IMG/VR virus record: IMGVR_UViG_3300049215_000771
Location: 124,001 to 188,000 of that record
Reading direction: 5' to 3' (one strand)
Length of the DNA stretch: 64,000 nucleotides
In this document: positions 5,752 through 55,650 of the stretch, in pieces
How the letters are laid out: each line of letters opens with the position of its first letter
Numbering within the stretch: the first letter of the stretch is position 1
Program-made: the position numbers and the translations under genes
Notes under the pieces: model-generated
Database searches by the model: none
Told to the model about the DNA's origin: nothing
Seen by the model: only the letters and a program-made list of their open reading frames with translations

Positions 5752-6005
5752 AACTCATCTACGTTTATACCGACGAACACGGGCGAGAGCGTGGCTTCGT
5801 CAACGAGAACGACGCCAGCCTCGCCAGGGGTTATGGCTCTGGTCTTGACCGACCTCCTGTTCGTGAGATCAAGGTGTTCGAGAACTACGGCGAATTTGCC
5901 GATGAACGCAACCAGGCCATTATCGACAATGCCCTCGCCAAACTGACGGCCCAGGAGAAGAAACTGCTGGGCTTGACGTTCCCGGAGAAGCCTGACGAAG
6001 AATAA
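5748..6005 (+). CDS. hypothetical protein
   Basis: ATGA-coupled ORF. Confidence 0.7.
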   Translation: MKLIYVYTDEHGRERGFVNENDASLARGYGSGLDRPPVREIKVFENYGEFADERNQAIIDNALAKLTAQEKKLLGLTFPEKPDEE

Positions 6006-6012
6006 CGTCTTG

Positions 6013-6310
6013 GTACGCAACTACTCGAACGTCGTCCCGCATGTAGGAGGCGGCGAGTGTGTACGGCCCAGGGCGGGAAGGAGTTGCAAATGCCTCGTGG
6101 ACCCCCGTAGGAACCAACAAGAACTTCATACTGAGGGGCATCTGATGGCTCTGTATTGCAATCGTGCCAGAGCCGCCCCATTTTCCGCATGACTGATTGA
6201 AGAAGGCTCTTGGTTCCAACCTGGAGGGCGTCATGCACGCACGAGAACCCCCGTAAGATCATACACCCATGCTGTGGGGCCAGGGACGGCTATCCCTGGC
6301 CCCTGTATTT
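6013..6310 (+). ncRNA. candidate structured ncRNA or cis-regulatory leader (about 300 nt)
   Basis: Gap without a credible ORF; several stems (6013-19/6058-64, 6031-36/6049-54, 6135-39/6175-79, 6147-52/6169-74, 6187-93/6230-36), an 8-bp long-range pair 6110-17/6210-17 and a terminal hairpin. Confidence 0.6.
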
Positions 6311-6311
6311 T
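6276..6311 (+). terminator. intrinsic terminator
   Basis: GGGGCCAGGGA-CGGCTA-TCCCTGGCCCC (11 bp) followed by TGTATTTTT. Confidence 0.75.
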
Positions 6312-6330
6312 TCACCTTCAGGAATTCAAC

Positions 6331-6624
6331 ATGGCTGAAATCATTGTCCGAGTCCATCATCACTGGAAAGACAACGAAGAAAGTTTGGTCAAGCGCATCG
6401 CCCGTGTCGTCTGCCATGACGATTCGATGTGTGAGCAGCAGAAAATGGGCTACAAGTGGGGGCTGAATACCAGCGGCAATGACTGGTGGGCCTCCGGGAT
6501 TGAGAAAAACGACAAACATTACTTCATCAAAGTGGCCTACCGTTACGGACACGGCGGGCGCAATGCCGCAATGATGGAGGCGCTGAAGATTTTCTTGGAG
6601 TGGGAACTTGGACCGCTCGAATAA
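6331..6624 (+). CDS. hypothetical protein
   Basis: AGGA SD before ATG 6331. Confidence 0.7.
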   Translation: MAEIIVRVHHHWKDNEESLVKRIARVVCHDDSMCEQQKMGYKWGLNTSGNDWWASGIEKNDKHYFIKVAYRYGHGGRNAAMMEALKIFLEWELGPLE

Positions 6625-7078
6625 CTTCTGGTTCGTGTACTACCGGAACGTCAACCTCATCAGCATAGATGAGATTACGAACGGCCTGGTGTGGAAACGT
6701 GTGCCTGAACTTCCGCATGGTTTCCTCACCAGGGAGGATGCGCTTGGCTGGCTCGAACTGCTGGCGGACGATAAGTTGGTGGAAATTCCACAACGCACAA
6801 CAACCTGGAGTGGAAGCCGGTATTCTTACAAGAAACCGGAGGAACCAATCTATCGTTTCGCCAAGTTCCCTGCGTATTTCTACAAGGTATTTCCAGCCGG
6901 GATCATATACACCGAAGTATCCGCTCCCGACACAAATAGCCCTTGGAACGTCGGGGTGCTGCGAGAAATGGTTGGACACCCCAGGCCGGAAAGCATTCAC
7001 CCGCCCAGGCGGTCCAAACTCCGAATCGCAATTGATTCTCCCTTAGCCAGTTGTGGCGGCGGCATCGTGGAAATTTGA
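6608..7078 (+). CDS. hypothetical protein
   Basis: TTG start with GGAG SD; start uncertain. Confidence 0.55.
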   Translation: MDRSNNFWFVYYRNVNLISIDEITNGLVWKRVPELPHGFLTREDALGWLELLADDKLVEIPQRTTTWSGSRYSYKKPEEPIYRFAKFPAYFYKVFPAGIIYTEVSAPDTNSPWNVGVLREMVGHPRPESIHPPRRSKLRIAIDSPLASCGGGIVEI

Positions 7079-7096
7079 TGATTCTTGCCTAACTAC

Positions 7097-7125
7097 TTGA
7101 CAACCGCCAAAAACCGAAGTAGTAT
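7097..7125 (+). promoter_or_regulatory. sigma70-type promoter
   Basis: TTGACA-N17-TAGTAT. Confidence 0.8.
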
Positions 7126-7164
7126 AGGCGTGTGGAAACGAGAAACCTCAAACCGGAGAAAACC

Positions 7165-7512
7165 ATGAGTCACTAGGGCACGCAAACTGAGAGTCACGTC
7201 TACATCTTTGTCCGCAAGGACTTGCCCTTCGAGCAGATCGTCGTCCAGACGGCGCACGCCGGCATGGAGATGATTCGCCGGGGTTTCCTCCCCACCCATC
7301 TCGATCATCCGAATCTCGTGGTTGTTGGTATCGACCACGAAGACAAACTTCACCGCACCCTGCACAAAATCAAGCAGAGTGGCGTGGAGTGTATCCCCTT
7401 TATCGAACCCGACCGCAACGACGAACTGACTGCCTTCGCCACGGAGCCGATCCAGGGCGAGCGCCGGCATCTGTTCCGTCGCTACAACTGCCTCCGGGTT
7501 CCCTTCCTCTAG
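7165..7512 (+). CDS. Pth2-like peptidyl-tRNA hydrolase with in-frame TAG at codon 4
   Basis: VYIFVRKDL...QTAHA...LVVVG...FIEPDRNDELTAFATEP motifs of the Pth2 fold; GGAG SD and ATG 7165 in frame, TAG at 7174-7176. Confidence 0.8.
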
Positions 7513-7542
7513 GGGAAATCTACAACTAACCCAATCACCGAA

Positions 7543-7570
7543 GGACCGGCTGTTTCGACAGTCGCCGTCC
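7543..7570 (+). other. UUCG-capped hairpin in intergenic leader
   Basis: GGAC-CGGCTGT-TTCG-ACAGTCG-CC-GTCC; no U-tract. Confidence 0.5.
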
Positions 7571-7598
7571 CCGGAGATACTACGCATATGGAGCAACA

Positions 7599-8147
7599 AT
7601 GTCTGAATACAAGCCAATGAATGTACGGTCTGAAGAAGACTTCAACACTGAAGAGCGCAAACACGATGAATGGTGTCAGCAGCATTGGGACGAGAAGACT
7701 CGCCAGGGCCGGCTCGAATCCCACAAGCGAAGGGAGGAAAAACGACAAGAACTCCGTGAGAAGTTCCCATTCACCTGCATTGTGCAGGGCAGCTACCCGG
7801 AAGTGGACAACGCCAATAGTTGGTGCTGGGATCACTTCGGGCCTCGTGATGGAAAGTGTGAGTATGAACATACCAGCGAATACCCTGGGTGTCCGCTGGT
7901 GAGGGCAACAATGTACATCCAGGAGGGTTCGTACAAGGACAAGGAAGGTAACGAACACCACTGGAAGGAGAAAGCCTACAAGGAAGTGCCTGCCCACGAA
8001 CATGAAGGTGTGTGGGCGGAATACTGGCTGGGTAAAACCGGCTATGACTATGGCAACGCAGAGTTTTATTTCAAGAATGAGGCCGACAGGGACGCTTTTG
8101 TGAGCGCTGTTCCCGCCATCGGCTTCGGTGACAGGTACGACAACTAG
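7599..8147 (+). CDS. hypothetical protein
   Basis: GGAG SD. Confidence 0.75.
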   Translation: MSEYKPMNVRSEEDFNTEERKHDEWCQQHWDEKTRQGRLESHKRREEKRQELREKFPFTCIVQGSYPEVDNANSWCWDHFGPRDGKCEYEHTSEYPGCPLVRATMYIQEGSYKDKEGNEHHWKEKAYKEVPAHEHEGVWAEYWLGKTGYDYGNAEFYFKNEADRDAFVSAVPAIGFGDRYDN

Positions 8148-8162
8148 AAGGAGAAATGTCCA

Positions 8163-8666
8163 ATGAACGCAACTGTGAATGTCGGCACGCTGCTTCCCGC
8201 CAACGTGTTCCAAAGCCGGTGGGGTTTCCATCCGGTCAGCCGGGAGATCGACAAGAAACTTCGCTTCCTCAACACTGTTTATCAGCGTGCCCTTCGCATG
8301 GCGGCGACGTGGCGGCGATGGGAACGGAAGGCTCCGCACAACCGGGTCACTCGGCCCAAGGTGAAGGATTCGTCCGGCCAGGTGATTGGCTACGGTGAGC
8401 CGACGCCGTGGAACGAGCCGGCGATCTGCCCGATCTTCACCAGCAAGATCACCAAGAAGGTGCAGTGGCACCCGACGCTGGGCTACCACAAGGATGGGAT
8501 TGACTACACCTACGTCGAGACGCATGGTGAGGAAATCCTGGCGGCGGCTCGACAGGCTCGGACGCCTTGCCCGACCCCGGAGGCGGTTCGCCCGCTTTCG
8601 CTCACTGTTGAGGAAATCAACAGCCTCTACGACCGTGCTGTGGAGTGGATGGCGACCAGGAAGTAA
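8163..8666 (+). CDS. hypothetical protein
   Basis: AAGGAG SD. Confidence 0.75.
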   Translation: MNATVNVGTLLPANVFQSRWGFHPVSREIDKKLRFLNTVYQRALRMAATWRRWERKAPHNRVTRPKVKDSSGQVIGYGEPTPWNEPAICPIFTSKITKKVQWHPTLGYHKDGIDYTYVETHGEEILAAARQARTPCPTPEAVRPLSLTVEEINSLYDRAVEWMATRK

Positions 8667-8673
8667 CCTAAAC

Positions 8674-8713
8674 AAAATGGGCCACTTGACTTTTTGTTCA
8701 AGTGGCCCATTTT
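8674..8713. terminator. bidirectional terminator between convergent genes
   Basis: Perfect 16-bp inverted repeat AAAATGGGCCACTTGA / TCAAGTGGCCCATTTT. Confidence 0.8.
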
Positions 8714-8720
8714 AGTCAGG

Positions 8721-9587
8721 TTAGTCTTGTCCCCGCAACTGTTCGTTGATGGCTTCATGTTCCGCCATCTTCTGCTCGAAAAACTCCTGCTCGCTGGGCA
8801 CGTCGGGCAGTTTTTTCTTCAACTTCCCAAGCAGTCCTTGCTTCATGAAGTTTTCCATGATTGGCTCGTCAGGCAATCCGGCTTTCTGGCGAACTTCCTT
8901 CTCAGAAGCAGTCGCCGCTGTTGCCGTTTTCCTCAGCTTCTCACACTCAATCGACAGGCGCATGTTCCTGGCTTCCAGGATTTTCATCTGTGCCTTGAGT
9001 TCGTCGATCTCATCTTGTTGTTTCTTGAACTTGGGCGTGGCGTTCTCGGCGGCGATGGCACGGGATTTCTCCCAATTGCCTTCGATGGCTTCTTCGACCA
9101 TATAGGTGCTGGGAATCATCAACCGCCAGCGTTCCAGCAGCTTCTCCGAGATGCCTCCTTCTTCGGCTTCATGGAGTTCCTGCCATTTGTGAGTGAGGTA
9201 CTGGTCCACCTTGTTGACGATGTATTCTTTGATTTCTTTCAGCTTGACTTCGTATTCTTCGTACAGCGTCACTTCCAAGGTGTTGTTCTTCTCACGCTCG
9301 GCCTGAAGCATCTGGTAGGCTTCTTCGTAGCCTTCTTCCAGCGTAGCCTCGAACTCTTGCTTCTGTGATTCGAGTCGGTTCCGAAGGTCCGTGATGATTT
9401 GATACGCTTCTTCGTAGCCCTGATATGCCACTTTCTCGTTGGCATTCAGTTCTTCAGACAGGGCAGCGTAGGCTTGTTCCAGTTTGGCGTTATATTCCGC
9501 CTCCAGTTCAGCCTTGATCTCGGCCCTCATTTGGTCGAGGTTGTTCTGCTCCCGCCTGTTTTTTCTATCGGTCCATTCATTTCTCAA
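8721..9587 (-). CDS. acidic coiled-coil protein resembling T4-like prohead core/scaffold (gp22-like)
   Basis: E-rich heptads, repeated GYEEAYQ, IVNKVDQYL..W reminiscent of gp22-type VDxYL; TTG start inferred from AAGGAG SD. Confidence 0.5.
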   Translation of the reverse strand: MRNEWTDRKNRREQNNLDQMRAEIKAELEAEYNAKLEQAYAALSEELNANEKVAYQGYEEAYQIITDLRNRLESQKQEFEATLEEGYEEAYQMLQAEREKNNTLEVTLYEEYEVKLKEIKEYIVNKVDQYLTHKWQELHEAEEGGISEKLLERWRLMIPSTYMVEEAIEGNWEKSRAIAAENATPKFKKQQDEIDELKAQMKILEARNMRLSIECEKLRKTATAATASEKEVRQKAGLPDEPIMENFMKQGLLGKLKKKLPDVPSEQEFFEQKMAEHEAINEQLRGQD

Positions 9588-55288: not shown

Positions 55289-55650
55289 TGATTCACGAAG
55301 AAAAAAAGATCACGATCTCGATGTCCCCTGAAGTGTATCGTGACCTTCGGAACATTGCCATCATTCGCTACATGACCGGGGCGATGGCGAATAGCGTTGG
55401 CGATGAGTTTCTGGTCAAATTGCTTCGTGTTATGGACAAGGGCGAGCAGGAATTCGTTTTTCGCTACAAAGACCCCAATTACGACGCATCCCTTCCTGAT
55501 GGGAAGGGCATCTCGATGAAGAAGGACAACACCGATGGGCAAACCCAAGGTGATCCAGTCAAGGTGGAAATTGAAGAAGTCTCCCGACCCGAAACCGATT
55601 GTTGCCCGCTTCCTGGACGATCTGGTGAAGCGAGCGGCGCAGTCGCCTGA
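55288..55650 (+). CDS. hypothetical protein
   Basis: TGATG coupling; tail overlaps the next ORF. Confidence 0.6.
   Translation: MIHEEKKITISMSPEVYRDLRNIAIIRYMTGAMANSVGDEFLVKLLRVMDKGEQEFVFRYKDPNYDASLPDGKGISMKKDNTDGQTQGDPVKVEIEEVSRPETDCCPLPGRSGEASGAVA

What the first reader, a model, noticed from the sequence alone, without database searches (positions are those of the whole stretch)
7097..7512. Pth2-like gene gated by an amber stop at codon 4, with a matched landing site for ribosomal hopping
A strong TTGACA/TAGTAT promoter and a GGAG SD lead to ATG AGT CAC TAG GGC ACG CAA ACT GAG AGT CAC GTC TAC ATC..., in frame with a complete Pth2-like hydrolase. The heptamer GAGTCAC occurs twice, 24 nt apart (7167-73 and 7191-97). 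Take-off at CAC before the TAG and landing at the second AGT-CAC would give MSHVYIFVRKDL, a natural Pth2 N-terminus. A matched take-off and landing codon around a UAG is the architecture of T4 gene 60 bypassing (established). Minigenes that terminate after 2-3 codons cause peptidyl-tRNA drop-off, the substrate of Pth (established for lambda bar minigenes). Inference: a self-regulating translation sensor that makes Pth only when termination or ribosome recycling is impaired. TAG is a normal stop elsewhere in the window, so this is not global recoding.
Basis: partly seen in the sequence, partly recalled or inferred. Interest (0 to 1): 0.82.

Follow-up and report, generated by a model that had tools for sequence, protein, structure and literature searches.

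The report
Suppressor-tRNA-gated Pth2-like phage gene
A huge phage carries a small peptidyl-tRNA-hydrolase-like gene that can be translated only if a stop codon at its fourth codon is read by the phage's own stop-reading tRNA, and this tRNA-plus-gated-gene pair is shared by dozens of large phages whose suppressor tRNAs had no known target.

Summary
SD GGAG, ATG 7165, AGT, CAC, TAG 7174-76 run in frame into a 111-codon ORF with a confident Pth2 fold. The same sequence is in two DNA assemblies and in metatranscriptome contigs. The hopping interpretation is not supported. The window lies in a 532,729-bp phage genome with 56 tRNA genes. Two are tRNA(CUA) amber suppressors about 2.5 kb upstream of the window. 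Homologues in at least 35 other large phages have the same layout: SD, ATG, usually 1-4 codons (up to 12), TAG, a purine, then the domain in frame. Every gated genome checked encodes tRNA(CUA), often within 1 kb of the gene. Two ungated homologues (RaK2, Hallingskeid) have none. One contig has a TGA gate beside a tRNA(UCA). Two others have an extra TAG inside the domain. The matched landing codon exists only in the window's own subclade, there is no take-off hairpin, and a 3-residue nascent chain cannot provide a gene-60-type signal. Best explanation (0.8): gene-specific amber suppression by the phage's own tRNA, tying hydrolase synthesis to suppressor activity. Why it is gated is inferred only. 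I found no paper describing it; the XacN1 authors reported no identifiable target for its suppressor tRNAs.

The parts
7097..7125 (+). Promoter-like site, TTGACA-17 nt-TAGTAT
   Evidence: Consensus scan matches 10 of 12 positions. An RNA-library contig begins at 7153, downstream of it. Function as a promoter is inferred.
7155..7158 (+). Shine-Dalgarno GGAG, 6 nt before the ATG
   Evidence: Sequence read. An SD-like purine run precedes the leader ATG in nearly all gated homologues.
7165..7173 (+). Three-codon leader ATG AGT CAC (M-S-H)
   Evidence: Leaders MSH or MTH also occur in Yersinia phage Yen9-03, LR756511, L042 and L043.
7174..7176 (+). Gate: in-frame TAG at codon 4, followed by a purine (G 7177)
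   Evidence: Confirmed in two DNA assemblies and one RNA-library contig. The stop is conserved as TAG in about 35 lineages and as TGA in one. The next base is a purine in all 24 strictly scored IMG/VR gates and in every other gate read.
7177..7197 (+). Linker GTQTESH between the gate and the core of strand beta1; no canonical start codon
   Evidence: The linker is always open and in frame in homologues. S6-H7 already belong to beta1 in the model.
7198..7509 (+). Pth2-like domain (VYIFVRKDL ... to the C-terminus)
   Evidence: Profile against PDB, AlphaFold model and Foldseek. Invariant D15, V23, Q24, H27, A28, E31, L58, E77 and T85.
7510..7512 (+). Terminal stop, also TAG followed by G. If suppressed, the frame stays open for 35 more codons to TGA 7618-20
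   Evidence: Intact gated homologues end in TAA or TGA.
7167..7173 (+).
7191..7197 (+).
   Evidence: Its His codon is a conserved residue of beta1 in the subclade. The heptamer itself is not conserved.

Best explanation
The TAG at codon 4 is decoded as a sense codon by an amber suppressor tRNA (anticodon CUA) that the phage itself encodes. Two such genes lie at genome positions 121393-121464 and 121467-121540. They are on the same strand, about 2.5 kb before the window and 9.6 kb before the gene.

A ribosome starts at ATG 7165 behind a good SD. Without charged suppressor tRNA it meets UAG after three codons and releases a tripeptide, so no enzyme is made. With suppressor tRNA it reads through and makes the full protein, M-S-H-X-GTQTESHVYIF....

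The gene and the tRNA form a conserved two-part module of large phages that otherwise use the standard code. Output of the Pth2-like hydrolase is conditional on, and scaled to, suppressor activity relative to release factor 1.

Shown here: the module, its conservation, the co-occurrence of gene and tRNA, and the matching of stop codon to anticodon. Inferred: that suppression is the decoding event in vivo. Speculative: the purpose of the coupling. The candidates are that the hydrolase is needed only when the suppressor is active (clean-up of aberrant peptidyl-tRNA), or that it feeds back on the suppressor.
For: 1. Suppressor tRNAs in this genome. It has 56 tRNA genes, including two well-formed tRNA(CUA).

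2. Conservation of the gate. The same SD-ATG-(usually 1-4 codons, up to 12)-TAG arrangement, in frame with the domain, is found in:
- cultured phages CBB, GAP32, Yen9-03, Arash, ME3, RsoM2USA, XacN1 and Xoo-sp13, and the 595-kb LR756511;
- metagenomic relatives L042, L043, L079-L081 and L157;
- 24 of 42 distinct IMG/VR loci by strict scoring, and at least 28 by eye.

3. Co-occurrence with a suppressor. Every gated cultured or complete genome checked has tRNA(CUA): CBB, Arash, ME3, RsoM2USA, Yen9-03, LR756511, XacN1 and Xoo-sp13. Ungated RaK2 and Hallingskeid have none. In 17 of the 24 strictly gated IMG/VR loci the cognate tRNA lies inside the fetched 8-16 kb, and in 8 it is within 1 kb. It is often directly upstream on the same strand. 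ME3 has only about 5 tRNAs, and one is the suppressor, about 420 nt upstream of the gene.

4. Stop-anticodon covariation. The single gate that uses TGA (L065) sits about 200 nt downstream of a tRNA(UCA).

5. Internal stops. L047 and L144 carry an additional or sole TAG inside the folded domain. Only sense decoding can bridge that.

6. No alternative start. 18 of 26 gates have no canonical in-frame start between the stop and beta1. Beta1 is part of the fold.

7. Context after the stop. The base after the gate stop is always a purine: A 15 and G 9 in the IMG/VR set, and likewise in all other gates read. At ordinary terminal TAGs of this genome it is a purine 52% of the time. From my own knowledge of the 1983 work of Bossi and of Miller and Albertini (not checked here), a 3' purine favours nonsense suppression.

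8. The TAG is present unchanged in DNA and in RNA-library contigs.
Against: - No direct evidence of translation exists: no proteomics or ribosome profiling.
- The amino acid carried by the suppressor is unresolved.
- In the window's genome the tRNAs are 9.6 kb from the gene, not adjacent.
- Seven strictly gated IMG/VR loci show no suppressor in the fetched stretch. Two of their contigs (44% and 37% complete) showed none among the tRNAs I fetched.
- Several ungated homologues also sit beside a tRNA(CUA) (L057, L061, L062, L064). The link between tRNA and enzyme is therefore not only about decoding.
- The TGA/UCA covariation rests on one contig.
- In the window's own subclade a hop would also give a sensible N-terminus.
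- XacN1, Xoo-sp13 and L157 have an ATG 3-4 codons after the TAG, which could serve for reinitiation.
Confidence: 0.8

Rival explanations
1. Ribosomal hopping. Peptidyl-tRNA(His) detaches at CAC 7171-73 before the UAG, slides 24 nt and re-pairs at CAC 7195-97, giving MSHVYIF....
For: The window, L042 and L043 all have a His codon before the TAG and another exactly 7 codons later. Ungated relatives start MSHIYVF or MSSHVYVF, the same N-terminus a hop would give. The heptamer repeat is locally improbable.
Against: There is no matched landing codon in LR756511, CBB, GAP32, Yen9-03, RsoM2USA, L046, L050, L056, L065 and others. There is no take-off hairpin. Only 3 residues are made before take-off, so a tunnel-acting peptide is impossible; from my own knowledge, that peptide is essential for efficient gene 60 bypass. 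A hop cannot explain the internal TAGs, the TGA/UCA pairing or the co-occurrence with suppressors. The second His is a conserved beta1 residue, also present in ungated relatives. The MSH-VY starts of ungated relatives can equally arise by deletion between the two repeats.
Confidence: 0.05
2. Leaky termination without a dedicated tRNA. Host near-cognate tRNAs occasionally read the very early UAG, and the gate is simply a strong translational attenuator.
For: From my own knowledge, termination and peptidyl-tRNA stability are abnormal on 2-3 codon ORFs (minigene literature). Some gated contigs show no suppressor in the sequence fetched.
Against: This does not explain why all gated complete genomes encode the cognate suppressor and ungated ones examined do not. 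It does not explain the physical adjacency of gene and tRNA, or the switch to TGA beside a tRNA(UCA). A weak SD would attenuate more simply.
Confidence: 0.07
3. Termination followed by reinitiation. The ATG-x-TAG unit is a separate mini-ORF, similar to a lambda bar minigene. The enzyme is made by ribosomes restarting just downstream, perhaps in response to peptidyl-tRNA drop-off.
For: XacN1, Xoo-sp13 and L157 have an ATG 3-4 codons after the TAG. L065 has GTG and TTG right after the TGA.
Against: 18 of 26 gates have no canonical start before beta1, and the window has none until TTG 7222. In every gate found the leader, linker and domain share one frame with no other stop (the screen looked only at in-frame upstream stops, so this alone is weak); reinitiation does not require it. 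Internal TAGs cannot be bridged this way.
Confidence: 0.05
4. The gene is broken (a pseudogene) or the TAG is an assembly error.
For: One relative (L043) has frameshifts.
Against: The sequence is identical in independent assemblies and RNA contigs. The stop is conserved across phages with 23-75% protein identity, and catalytic-site columns are invariant. The model is high-confidence.
Confidence: 0.01

Closest known systems
Stop-codon recoding by phage-encoded suppressor tRNAs (TAG- or TGA-recoded Lak, crAss-like and other gut phages; Borges et al., bioRxiv 10.1101/2021.08.26.457843)
   Same: A phage infecting a standard-code host brings its own tRNA(CUA) or tRNA(UCA), and in-frame stops in phage genes become readable only once that tRNA is active. 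It has been proposed as a translational regulator.
   Different: In those phages, hundreds of late and structural genes are recoded and coding density collapses under the standard code. Here the genome is standard-code. One small conserved gene family carries the stop, nearly always in the first few codons, and the tRNA gene is often its immediate neighbour.
prfB (RF2) autoregulatory +1 frameshift at an early in-frame UGA, and the infC AUU start
   Same: A translation-factor or quality-control gene carries an early recoding site whose outcome depends on competition at the ribosomal A site. Expression therefore reports the state of the translation apparatus.
   Different: Decoding here is in frame and by a tRNA, with no frameshift, no slippery sequence and no internal SD. 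Whether the product feeds back on its own gate is unknown.
Phage T4 gene 60 translational bypass
   Same: In the window only: a stop directly after a codon that recurs in frame downstream, so that take-off and landing would join two coding segments.
   Different: The gap is 24 nt, not 50. There is no take-off stem-loop, no nascent-peptide signal is possible, and the arrangement is not conserved in homologues.
Lambda bar minigenes and synthetic 2-3 codon minigenes
   Same: SD-ATG-one or two codons-stop. From my own knowledge, such units release short peptidyl-tRNAs, the substrate of Pth.
   Different: Here the unit is in frame with, and continuous with, a downstream enzyme ORF. Toxicity or drop-off was not tested.
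Pyrrolysine and selenocysteine decoding
   Same: A dedicated tRNA reads an in-frame stop in a specific set of genes.
   Different: There is no evidence for a special amino acid, synthetase or mRNA element. The tRNAs are ordinary class I cloverleaves, and ARAGORN's 'Pyl' label reflects only the CUA anticodon.
Archaeal and eukaryotic Pth2 (PF01981; PDB 2zv3, 1wn2, 3erj, 1xty, 1q7s)
   Same: Same fold (TM 0.6-0.73). Shared VR-D-L and Q-x-x-H-A motifs. Relatives XacN1 ORF364 and the Hallingskeid homologue pass Pfam's threshold.
   Different: Identity is about 20%. The Gly/Lys-rich loop before helix 1 is shortened. The position aligned with the Lys reported as catalytic in S. solfataricus Pth2 (my own knowledge) is a nearly invariant Gln. 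The phage also has a separate canonical PTH2.

Membership tests
T4 gene 60-type programmed bypass (hop) | Matched take-off and landing codons flanking a non-coding gap, with a stop right after take-off | tested here: met
   Window: CAC 7171-73, TAG, CAC 7195-97. Also L042 (CAT/CAC) and L043.
T4 gene 60-type programmed bypass (hop) | Stable stem-loop at the take-off site | tested here: not met
   Fold of 7130-7230 gives -19 kcal/mol against a shuffle mean of -22.3 (z = +0.94), with no hairpin over the TAG.
T4 gene 60-type programmed bypass (hop) | Nascent-peptide signal in the exit tunnel | tested here: not met
   Take-off would occur at codon 3, when only M-S-H has been synthesised.
T4 gene 60-type programmed bypass (hop) | The arrangement is conserved where the gap is conserved | tested here: not met
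   13 of 22 gated homologues have no synonymous codon in the linker. Matches in the others are at about chance level and mostly not at the domain start.
Suppressor-tRNA-dependent stop-codon recoding | A cognate suppressor tRNA gene in the same genome | tested here: met
   Own genome has 2 clean tRNA(CUA). All 8 other gated cultured or complete genomes checked have one. Two ungated genomes have none.
Suppressor-tRNA-dependent stop-codon recoding | An in-frame stop inside conserved coding sequence that must be read as sense | tested here: met
   The early stop has no downstream start before beta1. Internal TAGs occur within the domain in L047 and L144.
Suppressor-tRNA-dependent stop-codon recoding | The stop identity co-varies with the tRNA anticodon | tested here: met
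   23 TAG gates go with CUA, and the one TGA gate (L065) lies next to tRNA(UCA). There is only one opal example.
Suppressor-tRNA-dependent stop-codon recoding | Genome-wide reassignment (code 15 or code 4) | tested here: not met
   TAG behaves as a normal stop elsewhere. This is gene-specific recoding.
Suppressor-tRNA-dependent stop-codon recoding | Demonstrated readthrough product | not testable with these tools
   This needs proteomics or reporter assays.
Pth2 peptidyl-tRNA hydrolase (PF01981) | Pth2 alpha/beta fold | tested here: met
   Model pLDDT 92.8. The top 14 PDB matches are all Pth2.
Pth2 peptidyl-tRNA hydrolase (PF01981) | Score above Pfam's gathering threshold | tested here: inconclusive
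   The window protein scores 17.3 bits against a cut-off of 23. Homologues XacN1 (25.3) and Hallingskeid (23.5) pass. The family profile hits 2zv3 at E 2e-5.
Pth2 peptidyl-tRNA hydrolase (PF01981) | Catalytic Lys and Asp of characterised Pth2 (recalled from the literature) | tested here: inconclusive
   The HMM alignment puts a nearly invariant Gln where the Lys of the G-K-G-K loop aligns. Acidic E77 and D79 lie near the D-A-G position.
Pth2 peptidyl-tRNA hydrolase (PF01981) | Hydrolysis of peptidyl-tRNA | not testable with these tools
   This needs an enzyme assay.
prfB-like autoregulatory recoding | The product acts on its own recoding site (feedback) | not testable with these tools
   There is only the suggestive fact that the product is a tRNA-ester hydrolase homologue linked to the suppressor gene.
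Lambda bar-type minigene | SD plus a 2-3 codon ORF ending in a stop | tested here: met
   Drop-off and toxicity are not testable here.

The most novel reading that the evidence does not exclude
The suppressor tRNA and the Pth2-like enzyme form a self-governing circuit. The enzyme, made only by suppression, hydrolyses the ester bond on the suppressor tRNA itself (charged or peptidyl form), or on products of stop-codon readthrough. The phage can then hold nonsense suppression at a set level, or sense the balance between RF1 and suppressor. This would be a tRNA-based counterpart of RF2 autoregulation. It would also make the enzyme the long-sought dedicated target of suppressor tRNAs in standard-code jumbo phages.
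Probability: 0.25. Interest if true: 0.9.

Novelty: new variant of a known kind. Interest (0 to 1): 0.8.

Why it matters
Many standard-code jumbo phages carry nonsense-suppressor tRNAs whose purpose is unknown. The XacN1 authors read through all 18 amber-terminated genes in silico and found no target (PMC5852040). The RsoM2USA paper (PMC8504454), and the Atu_ph07 paper for its opal UCA suppressor (PMC6102473), only speculate.

This analysis identifies a conserved and often adjacent target that annotation pipelines miss. The gene is left unannotated, truncated at beta1, or translated with Q for TAG. The finding gives a directly testable two-gene module in cultured phages of Pectobacterium, Cronobacter, Yersinia, Acinetobacter, Salmonella, Ralstonia and Xanthomonas.

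It may represent gene-specific recoding as a regulatory device. It may also be the first foothold from which genome-wide code change evolves. Finally, it links a tRNA-ester hydrolase functionally to a suppressor tRNA.

Tried and rejected
- A megablast of 6000-9000 against cultured phages found nothing.
- A single-protein scan of IMG/VR found nothing, and the broad alignment A1 was too diverse to seed a scan. Sub-alignments A2 and A5 worked.
I reran it with permitted rows only.
- Global TAG recoding is rejected.
- I found no other early-stop-gated genes in this genome: there is no excess of SD-ATG-1-3 codons-TAG over the TAA and TGA controls.
- The amino-acid identity of the suppressor could not be assigned. 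Best paralogues differ by phage (Asn, Lys, Gln, Arg, Phe). An internal TAG aligns with K/K/D/D in relatives, which is too weak to call.
- The third 'CUA' call at c491736-491826 looks atypical and was not relied on.
- I looked for more TGA/UCA pairs and found only the one contig.
- I looked for tRNA(CUA) in two gated but fragmentary contigs and found none among the tRNAs fetched.
- Literature searches for PTH2 with suppressor tRNA, in-frame amber or jumbo phage returned nothing describing this.
- P0009's 'Q' at the gate position looked like a natural sense variant, but it is a TAG translated with a recoded table.

Full report
WHAT IS THERE. A promoter-like TTGACA-17-TAGTAT lies at 7097-7125. 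GGAG at 7155-58 is followed by ATG 7165, AGT, CAC and TAG 7174-76. The frame then stays open to a terminal TAG at 7510-12. GAGTCAC occurs at 7167-73 and 7191-97. The first canonical start after the stop is TTG 7222. Contigs from two moss-metagenome DNA runs match the region without a single difference. So do two metatranscriptome contigs (7153-7355 and 7179-7353). The TAG is therefore real and is present unedited in RNA libraries.

THE PROTEIN. Pfam PTH2 alone is weak (E 0.006). A profile of 35 homologues, however, hits solved Pth2 enzymes first (2zv3 at E 2e-5). An AlphaFold model is confident (pLDDT 92.8), and its 14 best PDB matches are all Pth2 (TM 0.6-0.73). Strand beta1 spans residues 6-13 after the TAG (SHVYIFVR), so initiation at TTG 7222 would remove it. 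The family keeps D15, Q24, H27, E31, E77 and T85 invariant. It has a nearly invariant Gln where the loop Lys of classical Pth2 aligns. It is large: 4026 cluster representatives at E <= 1e-3. The same genome also has a canonical PTH2.

The window is bases 124001-188000 of a single 532,729-bp phage contig. It carries 56 tRNA genes. Two of them are normal cloverleaf tRNAs with anticodon CUA, at 121393-121464 and 121467-121540. They are on the same strand as the gene and about 2.5 kb before the window. TAG is nevertheless an ordinary stop for the rest of the genome.

COMPARATIVE EVIDENCE. tblastn found homologues in jumbo phages. Their upstream DNA shows the same device:
- MAQ-TAG in CBB and GAP32
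- MSH-TAG in Yersinia phage Yen9-03
- ML-TAG in Salmonella phage Arash and Ralstonia phage RsoM2USA
- MT-TAG in Acinetobacter phage ME3
- MTH-TAG in the 595-kb LR756511

XacN1 and Xoo-sp13 have a longer fusion protein, and it is also preceded in frame by SD-ATG-AAG-TAG or SD-ATG-AAG-AAG-TAG. Closer metagenomic relatives behave alike (L042, L043, L157).

Database proteins whose N-termini read M-x-Q turned out, in 4 of 4 cases tested, to be TAG translated with a recoded table. About a third of the top 150 family representatives are called truncated within beta1.

Two IMG/VR scans gave 42 distinct loci. Of these, 24 are gated by strict criteria and at least 28 by eye. Leaders run from 1 to 12 codons, mostly 2-3.

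LINK TO SUPPRESSOR tRNAs. ARAGORN finds a tRNA(CUA) in every gated cultured or complete genome examined: CBB, Arash, ME3, RsoM2USA, Yen9-03, LR756511, XacN1 and Xoo-sp13. It finds none in RaK2 and Hallingskeid, whose homologues start with a plain ATG. In 17 of the 24 strictly gated IMG/VR loci the cognate tRNA lies within the fetched stretch, and in 8 within 1 kb, often immediately upstream.

Three observations are hard to explain except by tRNA decoding.
1. The only TGA gate (L065) lies about 200 nt downstream of a tRNA(UCA).
2. L047 has a second TAG, and L144 its only TAG, inside the folded domain.
3. The nucleotide after the gate stop is a purine in every case, against 52% at ordinary terminal TAGs in this genome. 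From my own knowledge, a 3' purine favours nonsense suppression.

In addition, 18 of 26 gates offer no canonical start between the stop and beta1.

HOPPING. In the window and its two nearest gated relatives, a His codon precedes the TAG and another lies seven codons later. Ungated relatives begin MSHIYVF or MSSHVYVF. A hop is therefore formally possible there.

The evidence against it is stronger:
- The second His is a conserved beta1 residue.
- The heptamer itself is not conserved.
- 13 of 22 gated homologues have no synonymous codon to land on.
- There is no take-off hairpin.
- A three-residue chain cannot supply a tunnel signal.
- Hopping cannot account for the tRNA co-occurrence, the TGA/UCA pair or the internal TAGs.

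The MSH-VY starts of ungated relatives are equally explained by deletion between the two short repeats, which would be an easy way to lose the gate. I rate hopping as at most a minor side route.

HOW IT MOST LIKELY WORKS. Shown: a conserved pairing of a nonsense-suppressor tRNA gene with a Pth2-like gene that carries the cognate stop near its start. Inferred: the enzyme is translated only when the phage suppressor is transcribed, matured, charged and able to outcompete RF1. The two window-proximal genes do not encode CCA.

The purpose is unknown, and two readings fit. In the first, the hydrolase is needed only when suppression is on, for example to recycle tRNAs from aberrant or abandoned peptidyl-tRNAs produced by readthrough. 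In the second, it acts on the suppressor itself and forms a negative-feedback governor.

Several ungated homologues still sit next to a tRNA(CUA) (L057, L061, L062, L064). This argues that the enzyme-tRNA link is functional and not merely a matter of decoding.

NOVELTY. Full-text searches found no description of this module. The XacN1 paper states that no target of its suppressor tRNAs could be identified, and the RsoM2USA paper only speculates; the Atu_ph07 paper does the same for an opal suppressor. The recoding literature deals with genome-wide code change. I class this as a new variant of a known kind: gene-specific programmed suppression by a co-encoded tRNA in otherwise standard-code phages.

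LIMITS. There are no translation data. The amino acid inserted is unknown. The opal covariation rests on one contig. Several gated contigs are fragments in which no suppressor was seen. The association statistics are not phylogenetically corrected.

Noticed in passing
G000:C1:63050-63778 (L078:1195-1923), outside the window: The phage encodes a release-factor-like ORF. It has the C-terminal half of the PCRF domain, an RF-1 domain with GGQ, and a P-P-T tripeptide at the position of the RF1 PxT motif (role recalled from memory). It lacks the N-terminal domain 1. An RF1-type factor alongside amber suppressors suggests the phage tunes UAG decoding in both directions.
   Followed up: partly
G000:C1:58760-59152 (L077), outside the window: A second, canonical PTH2 gene (Pfam E 1.7e-24) with no in-frame stop. 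The gated gene is therefore a divergent paralogue, not the phage's only Pth2. CBB and XacN1 likewise annotate a separate peptidyl-tRNA hydrolase.
   Followed up: partly
window 7510-7620: The gated gene's own terminator is also TAG followed by G. If suppressed, the protein would gain about 36 residues, ending at TGA 7618-20 and overlapping the start of the next gene (ATG 7599). Every intact gated homologue read ends in TAA or TGA instead.
   Followed up: partly
G000:C1:80837-80930: A 94-nt tRNA with anticodon UCA and a long extra arm, labelled SeC by ARAGORN. It could be an opal suppressor or a selenocysteine-type tRNA. No obvious early-TGA-gated gene was found.
   Followed up: no
G000:C1:13184-13278 and 55504-55586; c491736-491826: Two tRNA-like genes are predicted with four-base anticodons (cttg, aagg). 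A 91-nt 'CUA' call has an atypical anticodon region. They may contain introns or be mispredictions.
   Followed up: no
Public records: CBB_406, GAP32_397, Arash gp84c/gp85c, ME3_195, and P0009, P0020, P0021, P0036 and P0044: This gene family is systematically mis-annotated. It is absent (Yen9-03/04, Serratia BF, Erwinia SNUABM phages, RsoM2USA), truncated to start inside or after beta1, split in two, or translated with Q in place of TAG by pipelines that switch to code 15 on short contigs.
   Followed up: yes
L043:9959-10300: The copy on a 180-kb JGI contig keeps the MTH-TAG leader but is frameshifted in an A-run and again near the C-terminus. This is either decay or an assembly error.
   Followed up: no
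L146:15 and L146:2782: One IMG/VR contig carries both an ochre (UUA) and an amber (CUA) suppressor tRNA near a TAG-gated copy.
   Followed up: no
L039:557-1060 (XacN1 ORF364 N-terminal part); similar in Xoo-sp13, RAS14, L059, L060: In Xanthomonas and Stenotrophomonas phages the Pth2-like domain is fused behind a domain of about 170 residues containing an H-D-I-G-K-P motif, which is HD-hydrolase-like by eye. Pfam does not recognise it.
   Followed up: partly
L044, L156 and the contig of P0011: Ungated close relatives lie next to NAD-salvage genes (NAMPT/NAPRTase, nucleotidyltransferase, NUDIX) rather than next to tRNA genes.
   Followed up: no
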